Shown here: piece by piece, positions 4,161-23,000 of the stretch
Numbering within the stretch: the stretch's first letter is position 1
Layout of the letters: each line of letters opens with the position of its first letter
Assembly: GCA_053919585.1 (NCBI GenBank)
Contig: CM132792.1
Length of the DNA: 64,000 nt
Source: Euprymna scolopes
Taxonomy: Eukaryota
Strand: one strand, 5' to 3'
The notes under the pieces: model-generated
What the model saw: only the letters and a program-made list of their open reading frames with translations
Databases searched by the model: none
Told to the model about the DNA's origin: nothing
Program-made: the position numbers and the translations under genes

Positions 4161-5220
4161 AGGATTTTCACTACATTAAAAACCGACCTTTGCCATCGTA
4201 GGAAATATTTTTTTTTCACAGGTGGAAAACTTTCTGTTAATGTTTGCTAAAAAATAAAGGCAATAAACTTTGCTGTAGTGTTAACATATGCTGCATTTTA
4301 AAAAAGGTGGTTCACGCTGACAATTGAATGGAATAATAAATGTTGAAAAAATTAATAAATTAAGTAAAATTATGAATGTTGGCTTTGGGTGCGGGGCAAG
4401 TAAGTACAACAGTCATTTGTTAAAGTGTAGAATAATTAAGTCGAAAAATTGTAACCAATAACAAAAATAAACAAATAACTGATACCAAATGCAGTAAAAT
4501 TCAAGTATCTTTTATACGTGCTGAAACTGTGTTTAATTTTTTTTATTTCATTTCTTTTAGTTGTCTTTACAACAATTAGCTGATTACCTGTCGTTTAACC
4601 ATTGGGGACGTGCAATCGTTTAGGTTTTATTTCAATTGTGTATTCGTTTAGGTTTTATTTCAATTGTGTATTCGTTTAGGTTTTATTTCAATTGTGTATT
4701 CGTTTAGGTTTTATTTCAATTGTGTATTCGTTTAGGTTTTATTTCAATTGTGTATTCGTTTAGGTTTTATTTCAATTGTGTATTCGTTTAGGTTTTATTT
4801 CAATTGTGTATTCGTTTAGGTTTTATTTCAATTGTGTATTCGTTTAGGTTTTATTTCAATTGTGTATTCGTTTAGGTTTTATTTCAATTGTGTATTCGTT
4901 TAGGTTTTATTTCAATTGTGTATTCGTTTAGGTTTTATTTCAATTGTGTATTCGTTTAGGTTTTATTTCAATTGTGTATTCGTTTAGGTTTTATTTCAAT
5001 TGTGAAGTGAATAGTATCAGTAAGTAAAGATTTGCCTTTTAGAAAGGTTTTATTAACTGTAAAATACACGTACGCTCTTGAAAGGATCGAGCGGGAAAAT
5101 GAAACAGAGGGCGCTTTTATTATGAATGTCAATCCCAAGGGGGATAACTCTTAACAACAAATTAAATCATAACATTTTCCCCGTCCTAAAGTATTCAAGT
5201 AAGGGGTAATTAATTATAGA

Positions 5221-5257
<37 letters not shown>

Positions 5258-5312
5258 TCACATAAGAATCATTTTATTTACAAATAACATATGAACCCAA
5301 ACTGCAGTTTTT

Positions 5313-8113
5313 TCAGTATTTAGTCACAAAATCCTTATATTTACTAGGGAATTGTCGAACTCGGGACGACCTCCGCACAGATTGGCAGGAATGCTGATTT
5401 TCAGTATTATTTTTTAGTGAAATCTGATTTTCTTCAAGATCAGACGATTGATTTTTGTCTTCCTCATGACCAATGTTTTCATTAGTAGAAGGTTCAAATA
5501 AAGTCTCTGAAGTAGTAGGATTATTATTAGAGTTTTCTTCATTTGATGAGTTTGGAGCTAAGTCTCGAACGTTGACAGTGGTTTCAGTACCAGAAGGTAG
5601 TTGAACATAAGCGTAGTGGGGGTTGACATCTATTAGGGTGGCAGGCGTTACAGGAGGGTCATGTTTACTTGTTTTAGTGTGGTTTCTAATATATATTGGG
5701 CCTGGTTTAACCCAAGAAGGAATTGAAATTCCGGAAGCAGATTTACGACTATATTTAAATAGTCTATCATGGGGAGTCATATTAGTGGCAGTACAAAGTA
5801 ATGATCTAATTGAATGAAGTGCGTCCGGTAGTATGTCTTCCCAATAAGGTAGTTTCATTTGATTAGAATGTAATGTTGTTTGAATGGCCTTCCATAAGGT
5901 ACCGTTGAGTTTTTCAATCTGTCCATTACCTTCAGGATGATATCTACTTGTTTTAGAAGTAGCAATTCCTTTTTTGTGTAAAAAATCCTTTATTTCTCTT
6001 GCTAAGAAATCAGAAGCACGGTCAGTATGTATCATGTCAGGCAAACCAAAAATTGAAAAGAGTTTGTTTAGACAGTGGATAATGGTTTTGCTTGTCATAT
6101 CTCTGCAAGGAAAAGCGAAAGGAAAACGGGAATACTCATCGATTAGAGTAAGTAGATATTTGTTGCCATGTATAGAAGTAGGTAGAGGGCCTTTAAAATC
6201 AAGATTTAATCGTTGAAAAGGTAATATGGCTTGAATGAGAGTCCCTCCATTGGTATTGGCGAATTTGGGTTTCAGTAATTGACAGGATGAGCAAGAGTCA
6301 GTAATATTCTTAATTTGATCCAAAGTAAAAGGGAGGTTCCTCGTTCTTATAAAATGGCTTAGTCTTGAAACACCAGGATGACATAATTGTTTATGTAAAT
6401 CACGAAGATCTTGTAGATTGTAAGTAAGAGCAGAGATGCGAGAGAATGTGTCAGCAGCAATATTTTCAGGTCCAGGTCGATAAACTATAGTGAAATTGTA
6501 TTGGGATAATTCTATACGCCAACGACATATTTTGTCATTCTTAATTTTTGATTTTCTTTTATTGTCGAATATGAAGCTGATGCTCTTCTGATCTGTGATG
6601 ACTTTAAAGTGCCTGCCGAGTAGAAAATGTCGCCACTTACGGAGAGCTTCTACAATAGCGGCTGCCTCTTTTTCTACTGCATGGTGCTTAATTTCGTTAG
6701 TATTGAGAGTTCTTGGAAAAAAATGCAATAGGACGACCTTCTTGATTTAGTGTTGCAGCAATGCAATAGTTACTAGCGTCCGTTTCTACTTCAAATTCTT
6801 TATTTGGATCTACCGTTATTAAAGTGGCGTCTTTTAGATCATTTTTCAATGTTTGAAAAGATTTTAATACAGATGGAGGTAGTGGAAATTCTTTGTTTTG
6901 ATTTAGTAATAAAATTTTATCAGAAAATTTTTTAATGAATTTGCAGTAATAGGAAAACATTCCAACTATTCTTTTTTGAGATTTAAGATTCAGCGGAGGT
7001 GGCATTTCGAGTAATGGTTTTAGTCTTTGATAATCGGGAGCTATTTGATTATTTTCTATGGTGTAGCCGAGTAGAGTAATAGAACTAGAAGAAATTATGC
7101 TTTTATTTTCATTTAAAGTGATGTTATATTGTTTAGCAATTTTGTAGAATTTTTGAAGATTGTAATCGTGTTCTTCTTGATTTTTTTCCGCATATAGTTA
7201 CGTTATCAACATACACAAAGGTATCGGTTAGATTTTCTTTTTCTATAATATAGTCTATGCTCCTCTGGAAAGCACTTACTCCATTGGTAACGCCAAAAGG
7301 AAGACGAGTAAATTGAAAAAGTTTGCCACTTACTTCAAACGCAGTGAATTTACGATCAGCATGATTTATAGGTATTTGGTGATAAGCAGATTTTAGGTCG
7401 AGAGTAGAGAAGATGTTATATTGAGCGATGTCGTCTACCATCTTATTGATATTAGGCATTGGGTAAGCGTCTAGTTCCATGAATCTATTAATGGTATCGC
7501 TGTAGTCGACTGCCATTCTTTTCTTATGATTCTCATTCGAAGTTACAAGAACTTGCGCTCGCCACGGAGATATCGAAGGTTCAATTATGCCTTCTTTCAA
7601 CATTCTAGCAGTCTCTTCTTTTATGAATTTGTTGGCGGCAAAAGTGTAACGTCGGGATTTTGTCGCAATAGGAGTAGTATGAGGAGAAAGATTAGAAAAG
7701 AGAGGAGGGGGTGGAACGTTTATGGTAGGAAAAAAATTATTCGTGTTTATAGCTCCAATTATAAGTTTGTCTCTAGGACCGTCGAATTTAAGTGTTACTT
7801 TTTTATATTTTTTTAAAATATCTTTTCCGATTATTAAATCAATGAAAAGGTTTTCAATGATTTCAATTGTTATTCCAGAATGGGTTTTATCTTTCAGTAT
7901 TAAATCCACGACAGCTTCGCCAGTTATTTTAGCATGTTGATCGGAAGCAGCCAGAGCTGTAGTTTTGTTTTTAGGTATTGTGAAGAGTTTAAGTTTTTTA
8001 GCAGTATTTTCATTAATGAATGTTTTTACACTGCCGGAGTCCACCATAGCGTTCACGAAGTGCCCGTTAATTTGGCATTGAGTGAATGTAACATCTTTGG
8101 AGTTAGTTCCTAG
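5313..8113 (-). pseudogene. pol: G1 Pol (PR-RT-RNaseH-IN) with two apparent 1-nt frameshifts (~7185, ~6716)
   Basis: PR VDSGS; RT SPWRAQV, LDLKSAYHQI, YVDNV; RH TDAS, EKEAAAI; IN H-x4-H..CxxC, DFKGP, HTDRAS, GNGQIEKLN. Confidence 0.92.
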
Positions 8114-8917
8114 TCAGGATAGAGAAGGTGAGGGGTAGTCAGAGTCGTCATAAAGAACAGCAGTATGAGTGTTAGAAATAGAAGATTTACACACTTTAGC
8201 CCAATGACCATTTTTTTTGCATTTTTTACATTCGGCGTTTCGTGCAGGACATAAATATCGAGGATGACGTGATTTTCCACAGAAAAAACAAACCCCTTTT
8301 GGATGCATATTTTCTTTAGTCACAGCTATACGATTGTAGCCCGAAGGATTATTTGTAGCTGCTACAGTAAAGTTATTTGCGTAGCTTATCGAATGCTTTT
8401 CTGCTTGTTCAAGAGATCTGGCCGTGGCATATGTGTCTTGTAAAGTCAGGATGGGTTTTTCTAACAGTCGTTGTCGGATGGACGAAGAAGAAATTCCGCC
8501 GATGAAAGCTTCCCGAATGTATTGATTTTTGTTTTCTTCAGCAGAAACCGCTTCGAAGTTACATGTTTTGGCAAGCATTTCCAATTGTAGTATGAAGGCA
8601 TCTATATTTTGTGTTGTTTGTTGCTTCGTCGTCATCAATCGATATCTATTATAAACAATATTTTCAGGTTTTAAATAAGCGGCGTCCAATGTTCTTAATG
8701 CACTATCGTAGTCGGTTTTATCGCTTATTAAATCGAAAACAGAGGCTGAAATACAATTGATCAAGGCAAAGAAATTATCTGAAGTGTTTTCGATTAATCC
8801 GTTATTATGTGAGCGGATATAATTCTGGAGGGTTAATTTCCAATGCCTATAGGATTTTTCGGAATTAGGGCATGTAGGTTCCACCTCGAATCTATTGGGA
8901 TGTAAGATTCGATCCAT
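8114..8917 (-). CDS. gag: G1 Gag with two CCHC knuckles
   Basis: 267 aa; CFFCGKSRHPRYLC and CKKCKKNGHWAKVC. Confidence 0.9.
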   Translation of the reverse strand: MDRILHPNRFEVEPTCPNSEKSYRHWKLTLQNYIRSHNNGLIENTSDNFFALINCISASVFDLISDKTDYDSALRTLDAAYLKPENIVYNRYRLMTTKQQTTQNIDAFILQLEMLAKTCNFEAVSAEENKNQYIREAFIGGISSSSIRQRLLEKPILTLQDTYATARSLEQAEKHSISYANNFTVAATNNPSGYNRIAVTKENMHPKGVCFFCGKSRHPRYLCPARNAECKKCKKNGHWAKVCKSSISNTHTAVLYDDSDYPSPSLS

Positions 8918-11900
8918 TATTTTTTTTTTTTTTTTTTTTACAGTTAATAAAATTGAAGTGAATAGTATCAGTAAGTAAAGATTTGCCTTTTAGAAAGGTT
9001 TTATTAACTGTAAAATACACGTACGCTCTTGAAAGGATCGAGCAGGAAAATGAAACAGAGGGCGCTTTTATTATGAATGTCAATCCCAAGGGGGATAACT
9101 CTTAACAACAAATTAAATCATAACAAATTGTGTATTCGTTTAGGTTTTATTTCAAATGTCTATTCGTTTAGGTTTTATTTCAATTGTGTATTCGTTTAGG
9201 TTTTATTTCAATTGTCTATTCGTTTAGGTTTTATTTCAATTGTCTATTCGTTTAGGTTTTATTTCAATTGTCTATTCGTTTAGGTTTTATTTCAATTGTC
9301 TATTCGTTTAGGTTTTATTTCAAATGTCTATTCGTTTAGGTTTTATTTCAATTGTCTATTCGTTTAGGTTTTATTTCAATTGTCTATTCGTTTAGGTTTT
9401 ATTTCAATTGTGTATTTGTTTAGGTTTTATTTCAATTGTGTATTTGTTTAGGTTTTATTTCAATTGTGTATTCGTTTAGGTTTTATTTCAATTGTGTATT
9501 CGTTTAGGTTTTATTTCAATTGTGTATTCGTTTAGGTTTTATTTCAATTGTGTATTCGTTTAGGTTTTATTTCAATTGTGTATTCGTTTAGGTTTTATTT
9601 CAATTGTGTATTCGTTTAGGTTTTATTTCAATTGTGTATTCGTTTAGGTTTTATTTCAATTGTGTATTCGTTTAGGTTTTATTTCAATTGTGTATTCGTT
9701 TAGGTTTTATTTCAATTGTGTATTCGTTTAGGTTTTATTTCAATTGTGTATTCGTTTAGGTTTTATTTCAATTGTGTATTTGTTTAGGTTTTATTTCAAT
9801 TGTGTATTTGTTTAGGTTTTATTTCAATTGTGTATTCGTTTAGGTTTTATTTCAATTGTGTATTCGTTTAGGTTTTATTTCAATTGTGTATTTGTTTAGG
9901 TTTTATTTCAATTGTGTATTCGTTTAGATTTTATTTCAATTGTGTATTCGTTTAGATTTTATTTCAATTGTGTATTCGTTTAAATTTTATTTCAATTGTG
10001 TATTTGTTTAGGTTTTATTTCAATTGTGTATTCGTTTAGGTTTTATTTCAATTGTGTATTCGTTTAGGTTTTATTTCAATTGTGTATTCGTTTAGGTTTT
10101 ATTTCAATTATGTATTCGTTTAGGTTTTATTTCAATTGTGTATTTGTTTAGGTTTTATTTCAATTGTGTATTTGTTTAGGTTTTATTTCAATTGTGTATT
10201 TGTTTAGGTTTTATTTCAATTGTGTATTTGTTTAAATTTTATTTCAATTGTGTATTTGTTTAGGTTTTATTTCAATTGTGTATTTGTTTAGGTTTTATAT
10301 CAATTGTGTATTTGTTTAGGTTTTATATCAATTGTGTATTTGTTTAGGTTTTATTTCAATTGTGTATTTGTTTAAATTTTATTTCAATTGTGTATTTGTT
10401 TAGGTTTTATTTCAATTGTGTATTCGTTTAGGTTTTATTTCAATTGTGTATTCGTTTAGGTTTTATTTCAATTATGTATTCGTTTAGGTTTTATTTCAAT
10501 TGTGTATTTGTTTAGGTTTTATTTCAATTGTGTATTTGTTTAGGTTTTATTTCAATTGTGTATTTGTTTAGGTTTTATTTCAATTGTGTATTTGTTTAAA
10601 TTTTATTTCAATTGTGTATTTGTTTAGGTTTTATTTCAATTGTGTATTTGTTTAGGTTTTATATCAATTGTGTATTTGTTTAGGTTTTATATCAATTGTG
10701 TATTTGTTTAGGTTTTATTTCAATTGTGTATTTGTTTAAATTTTATTTCAATTGTGTATTTGTTTAGGTTTTATTTCAATTGTGTATTCGTTTAGGTTTT
10801 ATTTCAATTGTGTATTCGTTTAGGTTTTATTTCAATTATGTATTCGTTTAGGTTTTATTTCAATTGTGTATTTGTTTAGGTTTTATTTCAATTGTGTATT
10901 TGTTTAGGTTTTATTTCAATTGTGTATTTGTTTAGGTTTTATTTCAATAGTTTAATTGTGTAGATTTTATTTAAAAGTTTAATTGTTTATGTTTTATTTC
11001 AATAGTTTAGATGTTTAGGTTTTATTTCAATAGTTTATTTGTTTAGGTTTTATTTCAATTCTTTATTTGTTTAGGTTTTATTTCAATAGCTTAGATGTTT
11101 AGGTTTTATTTCAATTGTGTATTCGTTTAGGTTTTATTTCAATTGTGTATTCGTTTAGGTTTTATTTCAATTGTGTATTCGTTTAGGTTTTATTTCAATT
11201 GTGTATTCGTTTAGGTTTGATTTCAATTGTGTATTCGTTTAGGTTTGATTTCAATTGTGTATTCGTTTAGGTTTTATTTCCACTGTGTATTCGATTAGGT
11301 TTTATTTCAATTGTGTATTCGTTTAGGTTTTATTTCAATAGTTTATTCGTTTAGGTTTTATTTCAATTGTGTATTCGTTTAGGTTTTATTTCAATTGTGT
11401 ATTCCTTTAGGTTTTATTTCAATTGTGTATTTGTTTTGCTTTTATTTGAATTGTGTATTCGTTTAGGTTTTATTTCAATTGTGTATTTGTTTAGGTTTTA
11501 TTTCAATTGTGTATTCGTTTAGGTTTTATTTCAATTGTGTATTTGTTTAGGTTTTATTTCAATTGTGTATTTGTTTAGGTTTTATTTCAATTGTGTATTC
11601 GTTTAGGGTTTATTTCAATTGTGTATTCGTTTAGGTTTTATTTCAATTGTGTATTCGTTTAGGTTTTATTTCAATTGTGTATTCGTTTAGGTTTTATTTC
11701 AATTGTGTATTCGTTTAGGTTTTATTTCAATTGTGTATTCGATTAGGTTTTATTTCAATTGTGTATTTGTTTAGGTTTTATTTCAATTGTCTATTCTTTT
11801 AGGTTTTTTTTCAATTGTGTATTCGTTTAGGTTTTATTTCAATTGTGTATTTTTTAGGTTTTATTTCAATTGTTTATTTTTTAGGTTTTATTTCAATTGT

Positions 11901-14900
11901 GTATTTGTTTAGGTTTTATTTCAATTGTGTATTTTTTAGGTTTTATTTCAATTGTGTATTTTTTAGGTTTTATTTCAATGGTGTATTTTTTAGGTTTTAT
12001 TTCAATTGTGTATTTTTTAGGTTTTATTTCAATTGTGTATTTTTTAGGTTTTTGTTCAATTGTGTATTCGTTTAAGTTTTATTTCAATAGTTTATTTGTT
12101 TAGGTTTTATTTCAATTGTGTATTCGTTTAGGTTTAATTTCAATTGTGTATTTGTTTAGGTTTTATTTCAATTGTGTATTCGTTTAGGTTTTATTTCAAT
12201 GGTTTATTTTTTTAGGTTTTATTTCAATAGTTTATTTTTTTGGGTTTTATTTCAATAGTTTATTTTTTTAGGTTTTATTTCAATAGTTTATTTGTTTAGG
12301 TTTTATTTCAATAGTTTATTTGTTTAGGTTTTATTTCAATAGTTTATTTGTTTAGGTGTTATTTCAATTGTTTATTTGTTTAGCTTTTATTTCAATTGTG
12401 TATTTGTTTAGCTTTTATTTCAATTGTGTATTCGTTTAGGTTTTATTTCAATTGTGTATTCGTTTAGGTTTTCTTTCAATTGTGTATTCGTTTAGGTTTT
12501 CTTTCAATTGTGTATTCGTTTAGGTTTTATTTCAATTTTGTATTCGTTTAGGTTTTATTTCAATTGTGTATTCGTTTAGGTGTTATTTCAATTGTGTATT
12601 CGTTTAGGTTTTATTTCAATCGTGTATTCGTTTAGGTTTTATTTCAATCGTGTATTCGTTTAGGTTTTATTTCAATCGTGTATTCGTTTAGGTTTTATTT
12701 CAATTGTGTATTCGTTTAGGTTTTATTTCAATAGTTTAATTGTGTAGATTTATTTTAAAAGTTTAATTGTTTATGTTTTATTTCAATAGTTTAGATGTTT
12801 AGGTTTTATTTCAATAGTTTATTTGTTTAGGTTTTGTTTCAATAGTTTATTTGTTTAGGTTTTATTTCAATAGTTTATTTGTTTAGGTTTTATTTCAATA
12901 GTTTATTTGTTTAGGTTTTATTTCAATAGTTTAGTTGTTTAGGTTTTATTTCAATAGTTTATTTGTTTAGGTTTTATTTCTATTGTTTATTTGTTAAGGT
13001 TTTATTTCAATAGTTTATTTGTTTAGGTTTTATTTCAATTGTGTATTTGTTTAGGTTTTATTTCAATAGTTTATTTGTTTAGGTTTTATTTCAATAGTTT
13101 ATTTGTTTAGGTTTTATTTCAATAGTTTAGTTGTTTAGGTTTTATTTCAATAGTTTATTTGTTTAGGTTTTATTTCTATTGTTTATTTGTTAAGGTTTTA
13201 TTTCAATAGTTTATTTGTTTAGGTTTTATTTCTATTGTTTATTTGTTAAGGTTTTATTTCAATTGTGTATTTGTTTAGGTTTTATTTCAATTGTGTATTT
13301 GTTTAGGTTTTATTTCAATTGTGTATTTGTTTAGGTTTTATTTCAATTGTGTATTTGTTTAGGTTTTATTTCAATTGTGTATTTGTTTAGGTTTTATTTC
13401 AATTGTGTATTTTTCAGGTTTTATTTCAATTGTGTATTCGTTTAGGTTTTATTTCAATTGTGTATTCGTTTAGGTTTTATTTCAATTGTGTATTCCTTTA
13501 GGTGTTATTTCAAATGTGTATTCGTTTAGGTGTTCTTTCAATTGTGTATTCGTTTAGGTGTTCTTTCAATTGTGTATTCGTTTAGGTTTTGTTTCAATTG
13601 TGTATTCGTTTAGGTTTTATTTCAGTTGTATATTCGTTTAGGTTTTATTTCAATTGTGTATTCGTTTAGGTTTTATTTCAATTGTGTATTCGTTTAGGTT
13701 TTATTTCAATAGTTTAGATGTTTAGGTTTTATTTCAATAGTTTAGATGTTTAGGTTTTATTTCAATTGTGTATTTGTTTAGGTTTTATTTCAATAGTTTA
13801 TTTGTTTAGGTTTTATTTCAATTGTGTATTCGTTTAGGTTTTATTTCAATTGTGTATTCGTTTAGATTTTATTTCAATAGTTTAGATGTTTAGGTTTTAT
13901 TTCAATAGTTTAGATGTTTAGGTTTTATTTCAATTGTTTATTTGTTTAGGTTTTATTTCAATTGTGTATTCGTTTAGGTTTTATTTCAATTGTGTATTCG
14001 TTTAGGTTTTATTTCAATTGTGTATTCGTTTAGGTTTTATTTCAATTGTGTATTCGTTTAGGTTTTATTTCAATTGTGTATTCGTTTAGGTTTTATTTCA
14101 ATTGTGTATTCGTTTAGGTTTTATTTCAATTGTTTATTCGTTTAGGTTTTATTTCAATTGTGTATTCGTTTAGGTTTTATTTCAATTGTGCATTCGTTTA
14201 GGTTTTATTTCAATTGTGTATTCGTTTAGGTTTTATTTCAATTGTGTATTCGTTTAGGTTTTATTTCAATTGTGTATTCGTTTAGGTTTTATTTCAATTG
14301 TGTATTCGTTTAGGTTTTATTTCAATTGTGTATTCGTTTAGGTATTATTTCAATTGTGTATTCGTTTAGGTATTATTTCAATTGCGTATTCGTTTTGCTT
14401 TTATTTCAATTGCGTATTCGTTTAGGTTTTATTTCAATTGTGTATTCGTTTAGGTTTTATTTCAAATGTGTATTCGTTTAGGTTTTATTTCAATTGTGTA
14501 TTCGTTTAGGTTTTATTTCAATTGTGTATTTGTTTAGGTTTTATTTCAATTGTGTATTTGTTTAGGTTTTATTTCAATTGTGTATTTGTTTAGGTTTTAT
14601 TTCAATTGTGTATTCGTTTAGATTTTATTTCAATTGTGTATTTGTTTAGGTTTTATTTCAATTGTGTATTCGGTTAGGTTTTATTTCAATAGTTTAATTG
14701 TGTAGATTTATTTTAAAATTTTAATTGTTTGTTTTATTTCAATAGTGTAATTGTGTAGGTTTTATTTCAATAGTTTAATTGTGTAGGTTTTATTTCAATA
14801 GTTTATTTGTTTAGGTTTTATTTCAATAGTTTATTTGTTCAGGTTTTATTTCAATAGTTTATTCCTGTAGGTTTTATTTCAATAGTTTATTTGTGTAGGT

Positions 14901-15546
14901 TTTATTTCAATTGTTTATTTGTTTAGGTTTTATTTCAATTGTGTATTCGTTTAGGTTTTATTTCAATTGTGTATTCGTTTAGGTTTTATTTCAATTGTGT
15001 ATTTGTTTAGGTTTATTTCAATTGTGTATTTATTTAGGTTTTATTTCAATTGTGTATTTGTTTAGTTTTTTTTTATGTATGAGTATCTTGTGTAGGAGAC
15101 GGGGAGTCTCGTCGTGGGCGACGAAGCGTTTCACTGAAGAACTACGGCAACACACAGCGAACCAACAAACAATGACAGCCACGGCGCGAAGGTAACTAAC
15201 AAAGCTCAGCTGACTGCATGAATAGAAACGGAACCCAACGCTCACTGTACTGATCGCCATGAACGTCAGAACCTGACTGCCTCGCACCTCCAATGGACCG
15301 ATTTTTATTCCTCAAGATGGCCTAGCTAATTTGCATCCCCGCGCGATCCTGCGAGATTCTGTCTCTTATAAGAGCAGGCAGGCGCCATCTTTAAACTCTT
15401 TCGTCCGCTGCCCCGACGACAGGATCAGCCACCACCCCACACGCCAGGCACACACGGACCCTCTTGCGCCGAGGGCTACGGTTATTCTCACACTCCCCCC
15501 TGGTCTCCAGATCACATACGTGACACGGCGGACGTGGCCGTTTGAT

Positions 15547-18433
15547 TCAAGCATTCCTGCGGAGGGGTATTGCCGGGACTTCCTCATTGGAGCTGTCAGA
15601 ATTGTCATCGGAAGCATCAGCATTAGAGCTTGCAGTTGAGTCATCAGGTTCGTGGGGCACGGGTTGGATCCATCGCTCATCGTCGGATGACTCGCTACTT
15701 CCACTGCTCGCCGATTGGTCAGCGCTTAGAGCGGGCCGGACATCCCTTACGTGGCGCGGAGTATCATCGACTAGTATGGCCTGTTCACTGATGACGCCGG
15801 TGACCCGCCCCCTCCAAAAGCTGCTGGTGCACCGGCCGCCGGGTGCCTTCACCCAGACGGTGTCTCCCATTTAGTACATCCCCTGGGGTTCTCGTTGGTC
15901 GGGTAGACACACTTCAACGTCCTTGACGCGCACATGGTAGTGATGAATCACATCAGCGGGCACAGTGCCGCCAGTCACGGCGTCCTTAGGCGTTGTGTTG
16001 TATCTGTAAACCGCCTCCGCGATCGTACACTTCTTCCTGGCCGCGATCCTCTTCACGGTTCGGTTGCACCGCTCCGCTATGCCGTTGCCGCTCGGCACAT
16101 ACGCGCATCGGTGTCGAAGGCGGATCCCCCAGTTGTCCCTAAAATGCCTAAATTCCCTGCTGCAGAACGCTGTGTCGTTATCCGTGAGGATCTCCTCAGG
16201 CGGCCCCCTTTCGTAGAATATGGATTCCAATTCGTGGATGACACTGGTGGAATCCTGCCTCGCTAATTGGCGCCAAATCGCGAACCTCGTTGGCCCGCAG
16301 TCTCAGCGTGAGGAAGTGTTGGCTGCCGTAGTGGGTTATATCCATACCCAACCGACTCCAAGTCGTGTCCACTCCCAGTTGTCCTTTCCGCCATCTGGCT
16401 GGGGCGGGGTCGATGGACTGGCACGTTTGGCACTCCCTGACCACTGCTCTTACTGCGCTGTTTGGTATTGATGGTCTAGCCAACTTCACAAAGTAGTAGG
16501 TCCGTTGTACTCCGGGGTGCGCACTGTCGTGATGTATCTTCCTGATTTCGTCCTCCTCGACGGAGGCAGCACACAGAGGCAATGGCTTAGCTTCTTTTTT
16601 CATAGCCTCATACCATCTCCGTGGTACCCGAGTGAGCTTGTCGGCGAGGTTGTAGTCCGAGGTGACGAGCACTACGTCTACGGACAGGTTGTACTCCGTC
16701 ACCAGTTTTTTTACAGTCTCCAGCCTCCATCTTATCAGCATTTCGCTGGCTGCCTTGGTGCGTTCCCTGGCCTTGCTCGTGAGTGTGTCCGACACCCAGT
16801 GGTGCACGCAAAGTGAGTCAGTGTGCACACGCAGTTTCTTCACTTCCCATTGAAGTGCCAGGTTAATGCCCTTTATTACAGCGTCGAGTTCTGCCAGGTT
16901 GATATGGGCAGCATCATTCGCCGGTCGCAGCCAGCAGGCATCCTCAACTACGGCCCCATCTTTCTCCAAAACTACACCGATCGCTAGAGAACTTGCGTCC
17001 ACCCACACGCTCAGTTCGTCTCCCTGCACGCACCAATCCCCTGTGGCGGGGTCATTCTTTTTCACACTAGCGACGGTCTCCTTTAACATTCGGACCAATA
17101 GTTCGTCGGTTATGTCATCGTCCCAGCCTTTGGTGACCGCATTTGCCCTCCTTTTTATGACGCCTGTCGCCGCACGAACCCATCCGCATACTGGAAGGTG
17201 CCCCACAAGTTTCCCGCACAGGGAGAACACGGCACGTCTTGTGTAAACGTCGGGAACTGCGGTTCCATGCCTCCACTTCAGGATCCCTCGCTCCTCTTGA
17301 ACGCTCAAGCCCAATACGCGGGCGCCATCCTCAAGCCGCTCAGAGTCCTTGCAGTTTAGACCAAACTCGGCAAGTTTGGATCTTACGCGCGAAGATGACA
17401 CGATATCTTCGTTCACGTATATATCGTCAATATACGCCGATGTTCCCTTTCTGATCCATTCTTCTTGTGACAACACGGCATTGACGATAGCCTTCATTAT
17501 CTGGGGTGCTACGTTTAGCCCAAATCCGAGTCGCGTAAGACAGTATCTCTTCCCGGAAAACATCACTGTCTGGAAAGGCCACATCGCCTCGCCAATCCGG
17601 ACCTGCAAGTATGCTTTTCTCAAGTCCAGTAGGGACACATTGGACCCCTGCCGGCGCCACTCTCGCAGCTTGCTGGCACAGACGTCGGCGTCCGCTGTGA
17701 ACGCATCAACATGCGCATTCAACTCGCGGTAGTCCATTACCGGCCTCACCTTTGACTTGTTAGGTTGGGCAACTGCCATCAGCGGTATCAGGCCCTTGGG
17801 GGGTCCAAGTTTGTCGTAGGGGTATGGAATCAGCCAACCGTTCTTAATCCATTCACGGAGCTCGCTTTCGTATGCAGGCCTTATCTGGTCGGGCATACAG
17901 TACTCTGCCACTTTGTTTTGTAGTTTGGCCGGTTCCTTGTCTTCTGACCACCTCCAAGTGGCGGTCCACGCCTTCTGTTGGTCGTCGAATTCCGCACTGA
18001 AGTCCGGCTGGTCGACTCTTAGTGCTGCGCACACCGGGGGCCTATCCTGAAACTCTACAACGCCAGCGCGCGTTATGCGCACGCCGCCCAGGGCTTTGAT
18101 GGCATCGTAGCCTAGCAACAGGTCGAAACTCAGCGGCTTTTCGCGTGTCACCAGCGCTTCGACGTTGGCCGAGTTCCCAGTTCTTGTGCGAATGTGTACC
18201 ACACCCACGCCGCAACACATTCGTATTTTTCCAGTAATGGTAGTTATCCTGACGTTCTTCTTTTTCCACGCCCGACAGAAGTCCGCACACACTATGATGC
18301 GGGAGCAACCGGAATCAAGGAGGGCTGAACATAACGTGTCATTAACTCGGACCTGAATGACAGGGAGCGCCTTGTTTATTTTCTGTTCGGGGAAGAGGTC
18401 GGCACTGGCACCTTGTCCCCGTCCCCGTTTCCC
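15547..18433 (-). pseudogene. pol: G2 Pol (PR-RT-RH-IN), frameshift ~16305 and stop at 15871-15873
   Basis: PR LLDSGC; RT LDLRKAYLQV, YIDDIYV; RH WVDAS, NLAELDA; IN HHDSAHPG..CQTC, MDITH, LTDND, GIAERC. Confidence 0.92.
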
Positions 18434-19119: not shown

Positions 19120-19581
19120 TGAAGAAAAGAAAACCAAGTTCGGAGTGGGGGCGCCGAAATAGCTTGTATGAGTATTTTGTGTAGGAGACGGGGAGTCTCG
19201 TCGTGGGCGAGGAAGCGTTTCACTGAAGAACCACGGCAACACACAGCGAACCAACAAACAATGACAGCCACGGCGCGAAGGTAACTAACAAAGCTCAGCT
19301 GACTGCACGAATAGAAACGGAACCCAACAGTCACTGTACTGATCGCCACGAACGTCAGAACCCGACTGCCTCGCACCTCCAATGGACCGATTTTTATTCC
19401 TCAAGATGGCCTAGCTAATTTGCATCCCCGCGCGATCCTGCGAGATTCTGTCTCTAATAAGAGCAGGCAGGCGCCATCTTTAAACTCTTTCGTCCGCTGC
19501 CCCGACGACAGGATCAGCCACCACCCCACACGCCAGGCACACACGGACCCTCTTGCGCCGAGGGCTACGGTTATTCTCACA

Positions 19582-20094
19582 CTCCCCCCTGGTCTCCAGA
19601 TCACATACGTGACACGGCGGACGTGGCCGTTTGATTCAAGCATTCCTGCGGAGGGGTATTGCCGGGACTTCCTCATTGGAGCTGTCAGAATTGTCATCGG
19701 AAGCATCAGCATTAGAGCTTGCAGTTGAGTCATCAGGTTCGTGGGGCACGGGTTGGATCCATCGCTCATCGTCGGATGACTCGATACTTCCACTGCTCGC
19801 CGATTGGTCAGCGCTTAGAGCGGGCCGGACATCCCTTACGTGGCGCGGAGTATCATCGACTAGTATGGCCTGTTCACTGATGACGCCGACTGATTTTTAT
19901 TCCTCAAGATGGCCTAGCTAATTTGCATCCCTGCGAGATCTCGCGCGATCCTGCGAGATTCCGTCTCTAATAAGAGCAGGCAGGCGCCATCTTGAAACTC
20001 TTTCGTCCGCTGCCCCGACCACAGGATCAGCCACCACCCCACACGCCAGGCACACACGGACCCTCTTGCGCCGAGGGCTACGGTTAGTCTCACA
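19582..20094 (-). mobile_element. Second, internally deleted G2 copy in tandem (PPT + integrase tail 19582-19888 joined to a partial variant LTR 19888-20094)
   Basis: 19582-19888 nearly identical to 15493-15799, then jumps into LTR sequence ending TCTCACA followed by satellite AATTG. Confidence 0.9.
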
Positions 20095-23000
20095 AATTGT
20101 GTATTTGTTTAGGTTTTATTTCAATTGTGTATTTGTTTAGGTTTTATTTCAATTGTGTATTCGTTTAGGTTTTATTTCAATTGTGTATTTGTTTAGGGTT
20201 TATTTCAATAGTTTATTTGTTTAGGTTTTATTTCAATAGTTTATTTGTTTAGGTTTTATTTCAATAGTTTATTTGTTTAGGTTTTATTTCAATAGTTTAT
20301 TTGTTTAGGTTTTATTTCAATAGTTTATTTGTTTAGGTTTTATTTCAATAGTTTATTTGTTTAGGTTTTATTTCAATAGTTTATTTGTTTAGGTTTTATT
20401 TCAATAGTTTATTTGTTTAGGTTTTATTTCAATTCTTTTTGTTTAGGTTTTATTTCAATAGTTTATTTGTTTAGGTTTTATTTCAATTGTTTATTTGTTA
20501 AGGTTTTATTTCAATTGTTTATTTGTTAAGGTTTTATTTCAATAGTTTATTTGTTGAGGTTTTATTTCAATTGTTTTTTTGTTTAGGTTTTATTTCAATT
20601 GTTTACTTGTTCAGATTTTGTTTCAATTGTTTATTCGTTTAAGGTCTATTTCAATTGTTTATTCGTTTAGGTTTTATTTCAATTGTTTATTCGTCTTGAG
20701 TCTGTTTCAATTGTTTATTCGTCTTGAGTCTGTTTCAATTGTTTATTCGTCTTGAGTCTGTTTCAATTGTTTATTCGTCTTGAGTCTGTTTCAATTGTTT
20801 ATTCGTCTTGAGTCTGTTTCAATTGTTTATTCGTCTTGAGTCTGTTTCAATTGTTTATTCGTCTTGAGTCTGTTTCAAATGTACATTAGTTCAGGGTCTG
20901 TTTCAAATGTACATTAGTTTAGGGTCTGTTTAAATGTACATTAGTTTAGGGTCTTTGATTTGTACATTCGTTTGGGGTCTGTTTCAATTGTGCATTCGTT
21001 TAGGGTCTTAATTGTGCATTCGTTTAGGGTCTTAATTGTGCATTCGTTTAGGGTCTTTTTGAATAGTACAATCGTTTAGGATCTGTTTGATTAGTGTCTT
21101 TCATTTGTACATTCGTTTGGGGTCTGTTTAAATAGTGCATTCGTTTAGGGTGTGTTTGAATAGTGCATTCGTTTAGGGTGTGTTTGAATAATGCATTCGT
21201 TTAGGGTGTGTTTGAATAGTGCATTCGTTTAGGGTGTGTTTGAATAGTGCATTCGTTTAGGGTGTGTTTGAATAGTGCATTCGTTTAGGGTGTGTTTCAA
21301 TAGTGCATTCGTTTAAGGTGTGTTTCAAATGTACATTAGTTTAGGGTCTGTCTCAAATGTACATTAGTTTAGGGTCTGTCTCAAATGTACATTAGTTTAG
21401 GGTCTGTCTCAAATGTACATTAGTTTAGGGTCTGTCTCAAATGTACATTAGTTTAGGGTCTGTCTCAAATGTACATTAGTTTAGGGTCGGTCTCAAATGT
21501 ACATTAGTTTAGGGTCGGTCTCAAATGTACATTAGTTTATGGTCTTTGATTTGTACATTAGTTTAGGGTCTTAATTGCGCAGTCGTTTAGGGTGTGTTTG
21601 AATAGTGCATTCGTTTAGGGTCTGTTTGAACAGTGCATTCGTTTAGGGTCTGTTTGAACAATGCATTCGTTTAGGGTCTGTTTGAACAGTGCATTCGTTT
21701 AGGGTCTGTTTGAACAGTGCATTCGTTTAGGGTCTGTTTGAACAGTGCATTCGTTTAGGGTCTGTTTGAACAGTGCATTCGTTTAGGGTCTGTTTGAACA
21801 GTGCATTCGTTTAGGGTCTGTTTGAACAGTGCATTCGTTTAGGGTCTGTTTGAACAGTGCATTCGTTTAGGGTCTGTTTGAACAGTGCATTCGTTTAGGG
21901 TCTGTTTGAACAGTGCATTCGTGTAGGGTCTGTTTGAACAGTGCATTCGTGTAGGGTCTGTTTGAACAGTGCATTCGTGTAGGGTCTGTTTGAACAGTGC
22001 ATTCGTTTAGGGTCTGTTTGAACAGTGCATTCGTTTAGGGTCTGTTTGAATAGTGCATTCGTTTAGGGTCTGTTTGAATAGTGCATTCGTTTAGGGTCTG
22101 TTTGAATAGTGCATTCGTTTAGGGTCTGTTTGAATAGTGCATTCGTTTAGGGTCTGTTTGAATAGTGCATTCGTTTAAGGTCTGTTTGAATAGTGCATTC
22201 ATTTAGGGTCTGTTTGAATAATGCATTCTTTTTGGGTCTGATTCAATTTTGCATGCGTTTAGTGTCTATTTTAATTGTGTGTTGCTTAGGTGTTCGTCAA
22301 TTGGTTGTATTTGAATTGTGTAATCGTTTAGGGTCTATTTGAATTGTGTAATCGTTTAGGGTCTATTTGAATTGTGTAATCGTTTAGGGTCTATTAAATT
22401 GTGTAATCGTTTAGGGTCTATTGTAATTTTCCATATGTTAGGGTCTATAATTGTGTACTTGTTTATGGTATATTTCGATTGTGTATTCAATTAGTCATTT
22501 TCAATTTTGTCATCTTTCAGGTTCTCTGTTCATTGTGTGCTCGTTTAGGGGCTATTAGAATTGAGTACTGGTTTGAGTTCAGTTTGATTTGTGTATTGTG
22601 TAGGGTCTATTTCAATTGTGTACTCGTTTATGGATTACTTCAATTGTGTATTCAGTAGAGTACATTTCAATTGTTTAATCGTAGAGGGTCTATTGCAAGT
22701 CTGTCGTTTCTTTAGGATGTATTTAAATTGTGTACTCGGTGAGGGTCCATTACAATTTAACATTCGTTTAGGGCCTATTAAAATTGTGCATTCGTTTAGA
22801 GTTTGTTAAAAGTGTGCATTCGTTTAGAGTTTGTTAAAAGTGTGCATTCGTTTAGAGTTTGTTAAAAGTGTGCATTCGTTTAGAGTTTGTTAAAAGTGTG
22901 GATTCGTTTAGAGTTTGTTAAAAGTGTGCATTCGTTTAGAGTTTGTTAAAAGTGTGCATTCGTTTAGAGTTTGTTAAAAGTGTGCATTCGTTTAGAGTTT

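What the first reader, a model, noticed from the sequence alone, without database searches (positions are those of the whole stretch)
8056..8120. G1 gag and pol are in frame, separated by a single UGA in the CUAG readthrough context
Seen: ..TCC TGA CTA GGA ACT AAC.. with TGA at 8116-8114. The frame stays open for 19 codons into NGHFVNAMVDSGS (protease), with no AUG before the protease core. Established: UGA-CUA(G) is a leaky-stop motif (alphaviruses, mammalian AQP4/OPRL1), and readthrough is an uncommon gag-pol strategy in LTR retrotransposons. Inference: programmed readthrough rather than a nonsense mutation.
Basis: partly seen in the sequence, partly recalled or inferred. Interest (0 to 1): 0.7.

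Follow-up and report, generated by a model that had tools for sequence, protein, structure and literature searches.

The report
Leaky stop between gag and pol
A young, abundant jumping gene in this mollusc genome separates its coat gene (gag) from its enzyme gene (pol) with one UGA stop followed by CUAG, a known leaky-stop signal; a whole clade of related elements keeps the same seven letters, so ribosomes very probably read through the stop on purpose to make a little enzyme for a lot of coat.

Summary

- **The element.** G1 (window 5003-9125, minus strand) is a complete 4.1-kb Ty3/gypsy LTR retrotransposon. It has 172-bp LTRs and a CAATT target duplication, and it sits inside a 28-bp satellite.
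- **The junction.** gag (267 codons) ends at TGA 8116-8114, followed by CTAGG. pol continues in the same frame.
- **Within the genome.** 608 of 611 copies with exact flanks keep TGA. About half of 131 scored copies have a fully open 932-codon pol.
- **Across families.** All 10 DNA-checked families of a well-supported clade carry TGA-CTAG at the same junction. Their pol identity is 52-77% and their synonymous sites are saturated. The clade is nested among single-ORF relatives.
- **Coding spacer.** The 22 codons between the stop and the first AUG are conserved and form the start of the protease fold.
- **Sister family.** One nested family in this genome has TGT (Cys) in place of TGA.
- **Negative results.** I found no SECIS, no conserved 3' structure and no splice.
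- **Novelty.** This is a new animal example of a known strategy: fission-yeast Tj1/Tosmo elements, MLV, and the vertebrate and alphavirus UGA-CUAG motif.
- **Limits.** No protein evidence exists. The scan noted the same motif on another piece of this genome (s1-275180).

The parts
9126..9130 (-). target-site duplication CAATT, 5' side
   Evidence: the same 5 bases flank both LTRs, and removing the element restores the 28-bp satellite unit
8954..9125 (-). 5' LTR (172 bp, TG..CA)
   Evidence: direct repeat with 5003-5174, 99% identity (1 mismatch)
8117..8917 (-). gag ORF, 267 codons, two CCHC zinc knuckles
   Evidence: weak PNMA/capsid match; Gag-like clusters
8114..8116 (-). in-frame UGA stop at the gag/pol junction
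   Evidence: TGA in 608 of 611 copies and in 10 of 10 related families
8109..8113 (-). CUAGG directly 3' of the stop (CUAG invariant, second G in 9 of 10 families)
   Evidence: CTA makes up only 18.6% of Leu codons in these elements
8048..8113 (-). 22 sense codons between the stop and the first in-frame AUG; they encode the N-terminal strands of the protease
   Evidence: they align with DDI1 and Ty3 retropepsin structures from residue 6-14; Pfam protease models start at residue 9-12
7799..8089 (-). aspartic protease domain (D-S-G)
   Evidence: PF09668, PF13975, PF13650
7172..7522 (-). reverse transcriptase (motif C reads Y-V-D-N); the frame breaks near 7181-7187 in this copy
5313..7005 (-). 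RNase H and integrase parts of pol, in two further frames in this copy (second break near 6715-6716)
5175..5187 (-). polypurine tract directly 5' of the 3' LTR
   Evidence: read from the sequence
5003..5174 (-). 3' LTR
4998..5002 (-). target-site duplication CAATT, 3' side

Best explanation
G1 belongs to a clade of compact Ty3/gypsy LTR retrotransposons in which gag and pol form one reading frame interrupted by a single programmed UGA. Most ribosomes terminate there and make Gag. A minority decode UGA with a near-cognate tRNA, because the 3' context CUAG(G) weakens termination. These ribosomes continue into protease, RT, RNase H and integrase and give a Gag-Pol fusion that the protease then cuts. 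The stop thus sets a high Gag:Pol ratio. It arose once, from single-ORF ancestors that had an Ala or Ser codon at that place. Shown: the anatomy, the nucleotide-level conservation, the coding status of the spacer, the open pol frames, and presence in RNA libraries. Inferred: the readthrough itself, its efficiency and the amino acid inserted.
For: 1. Anatomy. G1 is a complete element with LTRs, TSD and PPT, and with gag-TGA-pol in one frame.
2. Family. At least 611 copies exist and 608 have TGA. 28 of 28 inspected copies have TGA at the junction. About 64 of 131 scored copies have an open frame of exactly 932 codons, bounded upstream by the stop. 3 of 11 fetched full-length copies read gag267-TGA-pol932.
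3. Clade. All 10 DNA-checked families (pol 52-77% identical) have TGA-CTAG at the same place, and 9 of 10 have TGA-CTA-GG. 4-fold site identity between families is 0.24-0.40, which is saturated, and CTA is 18.6% of Leu codons, so 10 of 10 CTA is about 5e-8 by chance. pol's own terminators vary (TGA x4, TAG x2, TAA x2) and are never followed by C.
4. Tree. The stop-bearing families form one clade with support 99-100, nested among single-ORF relatives that read P.LA[A/S] at that place.
5. Spacer. The 18-22 codons between the stop and the first AUG are conserved as protein and form the start of the retropepsin fold.
6. Sister family. A nested family with at least 40 copies has TGT (Cys) followed by the same CTAGGA. 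The junction is therefore read as one polyprotein.
7. RNA. Contigs of RNA libraries from four studies span the junction with TGA unchanged and no joints.
8. Literature. UGA-CUAG is a tested readthrough motif; 12 nt 3' of the stop suffice, and efficiency is 1.5% to about 31% (PMC4132726; bioRxiv 10.64898/2026.07.14.738498).
Against: - There is no protein, ribosome-profiling or reporter evidence, and UGA-CUAG has not been tested in molluscs.
- No conserved 3' stem-loop or pseudoknot was found. The CUAG class does not need one, but its absence removes a possible second line of support.
- In Candida Tca2 an in-frame gag UGA was not read through by its flanking sequence alone in a reporter (PMC2194720), so anatomy does not prove mechanism.
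- The TGT sister family shows the stop is dispensable for at least some amplification.
- The RNA evidence consists of contigs, which cannot show rare edited or spliced forms, and DNA carry-over in those libraries is not formally excluded.
Confidence: 0.85

Rival explanations
1. pol is made without passing the stop, from an internal promoter or subgenomic RNA, or by internal initiation or reinitiation after gag terminates. An internal junction promoter of this kind was seen in the Tca2 reporter work.
For: Tca2 precedent (PMC2194720). A conserved Met lies two residues before D-S-G in all families.
Against: That Met lies inside the protease fold, and 17 or more fold residues precede it. The same Met is present in single-ORF relatives, where it cannot be a start. 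The codons between stop and Met are conserved as protein. This rival does not explain why TGA and CTA are fixed at the nucleotide level. No joints or internal contig starts were seen at the junction.
Confidence: 0.06
2. The UGA is removed at the RNA level by A-to-I editing to UGG (Trp), as at the hepatitis delta amber/W site. Some mollusc hosts edit RNA heavily.
For: The host is a mollusc according to run labels. Contigs cannot exclude a minor edited fraction.
Against: RNA-library contigs of four runs show no change at 8114-8116. The A of UGA has a 5' G, which from established knowledge of ADAR preferences is a disfavoured neighbour. No conserved duplex surrounds the stop. This rival does not explain the conserved CUAG.
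Confidence: 0.03
3. The stop only terminates Gag, and these elements borrow Pol in trans from single-ORF or TGT-type relatives.
For: A TGT-type family coexists in the genome.
Against: Every stop-bearing family keeps its own full pol of 932-991 codons with protein-level conservation over saturated synonymous divergence. The TGT family is rarer and older, with at least 40 copies that are about 97% alike, against at least 611 G1 copies that are about 99% alike.
Confidence: 0.03
4. UGA encodes selenocysteine.
For: UGA is the Sec codon.
Against: No SECIS or any other Rfam family was found in the element at E up to 1. The sister family has Cys at the site but nothing else points to Sec. The site is a linker, not a redox centre.
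Confidence: 0.01
5. It is a chance nonsense mutation in a dead copy.
For: The window copy is itself defective further downstream.
Against: The stop is shared by 608 of 611 copies and by ten diverged families. A real random nonsense mutation in a relative looks different: L065 has TAA-CAA inside a zinc knuckle.
Confidence: 0.01

Closest known systems
Fission-yeast Ty3/gypsy elements Tj1, Tosmo1-3 and Tcry1 (bioRxiv 10.1101/2022.12.06.519325 = PMC10085805)
   Same: They have an in-frame TGA between gag and pol followed by CT(A/G), conserved at the nucleotide level across families. The authors suggest a single-ORF ancestor. The stop is reported essential for Tj1 transposition.
   Different: They are fungal elements of the Tf1/sushi group. 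Their conserved block is GAA-TGA-CT, whereas here it is TGA-CTAG(G) with Ala, Ser, Cys or Phe codons before the stop. The origin is independent: the G1 clade is nested among animal single-ORF relatives, and no chromodomain was seen.
Vertebrate UGA-CUAG readthrough genes AQP4, OPRL1, OPRK1, MAPK10 and MDH1 (PMC4132726; bioRxiv 10.64898/2026.07.14.738498)
   Same: They share the identical 7-nt core. Four families here even read TGA-CTAGGC as OPRL1 does, and two have GCA as the last sense codon, as OPRL1 mostly does. No 3' structure is needed.
   Different: Those genes add short C-terminal extensions to cellular proteins. Here the extension is a 930-990-residue polyprotein that the element needs in order to replicate.
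Alphavirus nsP3/nsP4 opal codon (UGA-CUA or UGA-CUAG, as listed in PMC4132726)
   Same: A UGA-CUA(G) gates synthesis of the polymerase and so sets a structural/replicase ratio.
   Different: These are RNA viruses, and many add an extended 3' stem-loop. None was detected here.
Gammaretrovirus (MLV) gag-pol readthrough (reviewed in PMC5009743)
   Same: gag and pol are in frame, and a small share of ribosomes read through to make Gag-Pol.
   Different: MLV uses UAG with a 3' pseudoknot. Here the signal is UGA with a short linear motif.
Candida albicans Tca2 (PMC2194720)
   Same: An LTR retrotransposon with gag-UGA-pol in frame.
   Different: It is Ty1/copia type. Its flanking sequence alone gave no readthrough in yeast reporters, and the mechanism is still unclear. 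It is a caution against reading mechanism from anatomy.

Membership tests
UGA-CUAG context-driven programmed readthrough | The stop codon is UGA | tested here: met
   608 of 611 copies; 10 of 10 families
UGA-CUAG context-driven programmed readthrough | CUAG lies immediately 3' of the stop | tested here: met
   invariant in 10 families, and kept in the TGT sister family
UGA-CUAG context-driven programmed readthrough | The downstream frame is open, protein-coding and conserved, with no start codon of its own | tested here: met
   pol open for 932-991 codons; the spacer is the protease N-terminus
UGA-CUAG context-driven programmed readthrough | The motif is conserved at the nucleotide level beyond what the protein requires | tested here: met
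   4-fold sites are saturated and CTA is 18.6% of Leu codons; pol terminators vary
UGA-CUAG context-driven programmed readthrough | A measured readthrough product (fusion protein, reporter signal or footprints) | not testable with these tools
   only RNA-library contigs were available
Ty3/gypsy (Metaviridae) LTR retrotransposon | LTRs with TG..CA ends, target-site duplication and polypurine tract | tested here: met
Ty3/gypsy (Metaviridae) LTR retrotransposon | Domain order gag(CCHC)-PR-RT-RNase H-IN | tested here: met
   Pfam; relatives; Ty3 Gag-Pol structure match
Mag lineage of Ty3/gypsy (Mag, SURL, Steamer-like) | Groups with reference Mag-lineage RT/IN sequences in a tree | not testable with these tools
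   No named reference sequences were at hand. The suggestion rests on memory only: short LTRs, single-ORF relatives, and an insect/mollusc range (PMC6238403 describes the lineage in molluscs).
Gammaretrovirus-type readthrough | UAG stop with a pseudoknot about 8 nt downstream | tested here: not met
   The stop is UGA. There is no consensus structure, and single-sequence folds have z-scores from -1.4 to +0.8.
Selenocysteine recoding | A SECIS element in the transcript | tested here: not met
   no Rfam match at E up to 1 in 4900-9200

The most novel reading that the evidence does not exclude
The stop may be a conditional gate rather than a fixed ratio-setter. In that case the share of ribosomes, or of transcripts in an RNA-editing mollusc host, that pass the UGA would vary with cell type or state, through near-cognate tRNA supply, release-factor level or A-to-I editing. 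Pol, and therefore transposition, would then be licensed only in certain cells such as the germline. The natural TGA-to-TGT family would be a 'gate-open' escape variant. Together with the self-priming proposed for this clade, this would be a second convergence with fission-yeast Tf1-group elements.
Probability: 0.1. Interest if true: 0.75.

Novelty: new member of a known kind. Interest (0 to 1): 0.5.

Why it matters
The finding suggests that the 7-nt UGA-CUAG leaky-stop cassette, studied in vertebrate genes and alphaviruses, was also recruited by a successful clade of invertebrate retrotransposons. It has been held there through deep divergence, which argues that the motif works across animals without any RNA structure.

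It also gives a natural series for study: single-ORF ancestors, then UGA-CUAG descendants, then a UGU revertant. That series bears on how mobile elements tune the Gag:Pol ratio and on which amino acid is inserted at UGA.

For annotation, pol ORFs of this clade should be joined to gag through the stop rather than started at the internal Met, as gene callers now do (P0001 begins at that Met).

Tried and rejected
- **3' structure.** RNAalifold on eight families gave only a 4-bp mini-hairpin around the stop with broken pairs. Single folds of 117 nt after the stop were not better than shuffles. I rejected this as support.
- **Rfam scan.** The scan of the element, including SECIS and viral recoding elements, found nothing.
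- **Within-family conservation.** This has little power on its own, because copies are about 99% alike. The 3 of 611 non-TGA copies fit neutral decay, so I rely on the between-family comparison instead.
- **Scattered pol-only proteins outside the clade.** These (P0041, P0053, P0031) are truncated or degenerate copies of single-ORF types, not further origins of a junction stop.
- **Gao et al. 2003 (PMC1370496).** The paper could not be read because it is not held. What I say of it comes from PMC5009743 and the S. osmophilus paper.
- **Mag-lineage membership.** This could not be tested.

Full report
**1. The observation**

On the minus strand the window reads ..TCC TGA CTA GGA ACT AAC.. with TGA at 8116-8114. 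Upstream, an ORF of 267 codons starts at ATG 8917 and carries two CCHC zinc knuckles. Its nearest protein clusters are arthropod Gag proteins. Downstream the same frame stays open into an aspartic protease (D-S-G) and a reverse transcriptase.

The first in-frame ATG is 22 codons after the stop, at 8047-8045. The statement that no AUG precedes the protease core is right.

**2. What the element is**

- G1 spans 5003-9125.
- Its LTRs are 172 bp (5003-5174 and 8954-9125) and differ at one position.
- A polypurine tract abuts the 3' LTR, and a 5-bp duplication CAATT flanks the element.
- It is inserted in a 28-bp satellite (4616-5004 and 9126-15074).
- The domain order is gag-PR-RT-RNase H-IN, so it is a compact Ty3/gypsy element.
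- In the window copy, pol is broken at two places by one-base length differences from other copies and from RNA contigs, near 7181-7187 and 6715-6716.

**3. The family in this genome**

The genome is 5.9 Gb, and run labels call it a mollusc.

- A 32-nt pattern around the junction, with the stop codon left free, matches 611 places. 608 of them read TGA. Of the other three, the one listed reads GGA.
- All 28 inspected copies have TGA at the junction. In four of them gag carries an earlier TAA as well.
- Of 11 full-length copies fetched, three read gag267-TGA-pol932 without further interruption, and three more have 917-929 codons.
- About 64 of 131 scored matches have an open frame of exactly 932 codons, that is, from the junction stop to the pol terminator.
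- Copies are about 99% alike, so this is a very young family. For the same reason, within-family conservation of TGA says little about selection.

**4. Relatives elsewhere**

A word-based protein search with an open pol gave two kinds of relatives:

- pol-only proteins of about 910-970 residues at 57-77% identity;
- more distant gag-pol fusions of about 1150-1270 residues.

I fetched the DNA behind nine pol-only proteins of the clade. [quoted passage not shown] With G1 that makes ten families. Nine of the ten read TGA CTA GG, and L064 reads TGA CTA GAC.

Between eight of these families (G1 and L042-L048):

- pol is 52-77% identical;
- identity at 4-fold sites in conserved codons is 0.24-0.40, which is saturated;
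- CTA makes up 18.6% of Leu codons in the pol ORFs, so ten out of ten CTA has a chance of about 5e-8;
- the Leu two codons before the stop uses CTA, CTC, CTT and CTG freely;
- the pol terminators are TGA (4), TAG (2) and TAA (2), followed by A, T or G and never by C.

In a 148-column alignment the only fully conserved run of eight letters is TGACTAGG.

**5. Phylogeny**

In trees of the pol region the stop-bearing proteins form one clade with support 99-100. The DNA-verified members span its deepest split. The clade is nested among single-ORF relatives. Those relatives read P-x-L-A-[A/S]-.. where the clade reads P-x-L-[A/S/C]-stop-L-G. The stop therefore arose once, from a single-ORF ancestor, and has been kept since.

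Pol-only proteins scattered outside the clade are degenerate copies of fused types:

- L049 is truncated;
- L050 is frameshifted in gag;
- L065 carries a TAA inside a zinc knuckle, which shows what an accidental nonsense mutation looks like.

**6. The spacer is coding**

The 18-22 codons between the stop and the first AUG are conserved as protein, for example D-[IV]-[ST]-[FY]-T-x-C with differing codons. Pfam protease models begin at residue 9-12 after the stop. Residues 6-22 align with the N-terminal strands of solved DDI1 retropepsin domains, and residues from 14 onward align with Ty3 protease. A protein started at the first AUG would lack part of the fold. The same Met is present in single-ORF relatives, so it is not evidence of a start.

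**7. A natural stop-to-sense variant**

A second family in this genome is about 70% identical in DNA to G1, and its copies are about 97% alike. At the stop position it reads GCA TGT CTA GGA. Of 40 exact-flank copies, 39 have TGT and one has TAT. It groups with G1 and its nearest relative inside the stop clade (support 99), so TGA became TGT secondarily.

This shows three things:

- the junction is read as one polyprotein;
- Cys is tolerated there (from established knowledge, Cys is one of the residues that near-cognate tRNAs insert at UGA);
- the stop tunes expression rather than enabling it.

**8. RNA**

Contigs from RNA libraries of four runs in four studies cover nearly the whole element. 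They span the junction with no change at 8114-8116 and no joints.

In one poly(A) library of 330 million letters the word depth is about 480-570. Pure DNA of a 5.9-Gb genome with roughly a thousand copies would give around 60. Transcription is therefore likely, but this is an inference. Contigs cannot exclude rare edited forms.

**9. What was not found**

- There is no consensus 3' structure.
- Folding energies do not differ from shuffles.
- There is no Rfam family, SECIS included.

The CUAG class is reported to need only about 12 nt 3' of the stop (PMC4132726).

**10. Comparison with what is known**

- UGA-CUAG drives 1.5% to about 31% readthrough in mammalian cells, and alphaviruses share it (PMC4132726). 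A deep mutational scan confirms CUAG and the -1 codon as the portable core (bioRxiv 10.64898/2026.07.14.738498).
- In-frame stops between gag and pol are known in MLV (PMC5009743) and Tca2 (PMC2194720). In Tca2 the flanking sequence alone failed in reporters.
- The closest match is fission-yeast Tj1, Tosmo1-3 and Tcry1. They have a conserved GAA-TGA-CT, and the Tj1 stop is reported to be essential (bioRxiv 10.1101/2022.12.06.519325).
- A 2003 survey, as summarised in PMC5009743, found that most animal elements use -1 frameshifting.
- I found no paper in the held library that describes this clade or UGA-CUAG in an animal LTR retrotransposon. Absence from that library is weak evidence.

**11. 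Verdict**

It is a new, independently evolved animal member of a known strategy. It is of moderate interest to people who work on recoding and transposable elements, and useful for annotation. An earlier first-stage note (s1-275180) recorded the same motif on another piece of this genome. Another (s1-275108) proposes self-priming for the same clade, which I did not test.

Noticed in passing
window 7172-7200 (RT motif C); P0001-P0120: The reverse-transcriptase active-site motif reads Y/F-x-D-N instead of the canonical Y-x-D-D. This holds in G1, in the checked members of the stop clade and in at least 75 of 120 relatives. More distant insect and nematode relatives have D-D. It appears to be a lineage-wide change of a catalytic residue in evidently active elements.
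   Followed up: partly
G000, family represented by L051 and L053: The TGT sister family has 14 of its 40 exact-flank copies on one contig (C46, 26-56 Mb). The rest are spread over about 20 contigs.
   Followed up: no
window 4616-5004, 9126-15074, 2331-2939, 20095-22000: There are large arrays of 28-bp satellites. G1 sits inside one of them, and removing it together with one copy of the duplication restores the repeat unit. Related but diverged 28-bp units form neighbouring arrays.
   Followed up: partly
window 15076-15799 and 19165-19888: A second pair of direct repeats of 724 bp (98.6% identical) lies 4.1 kb apart and starts exactly where the satellite ends. It is probably the LTRs of another element.
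   Followed up: no
window 8920-8942 and 5226-5256: Long A-tracts lie directly before the gag ATG and shortly after the pol stop.
   Followed up: no
window 8936-8953: There is no TGG-type tRNA primer-binding site after the 5' LTR. Tf1, a single-ORF relative of the fission-yeast elements that carry an in-frame TGA-CT, is known to self-prime.
   Followed up: no
P0001 and other pol-only proteins: Gene callers start pol of this clade at the internal Met two residues before D-S-G (P0001 has 910 rather than 932 residues). Public protein sets therefore hold N-terminally clipped proteases for the whole clade.
   Followed up: partly
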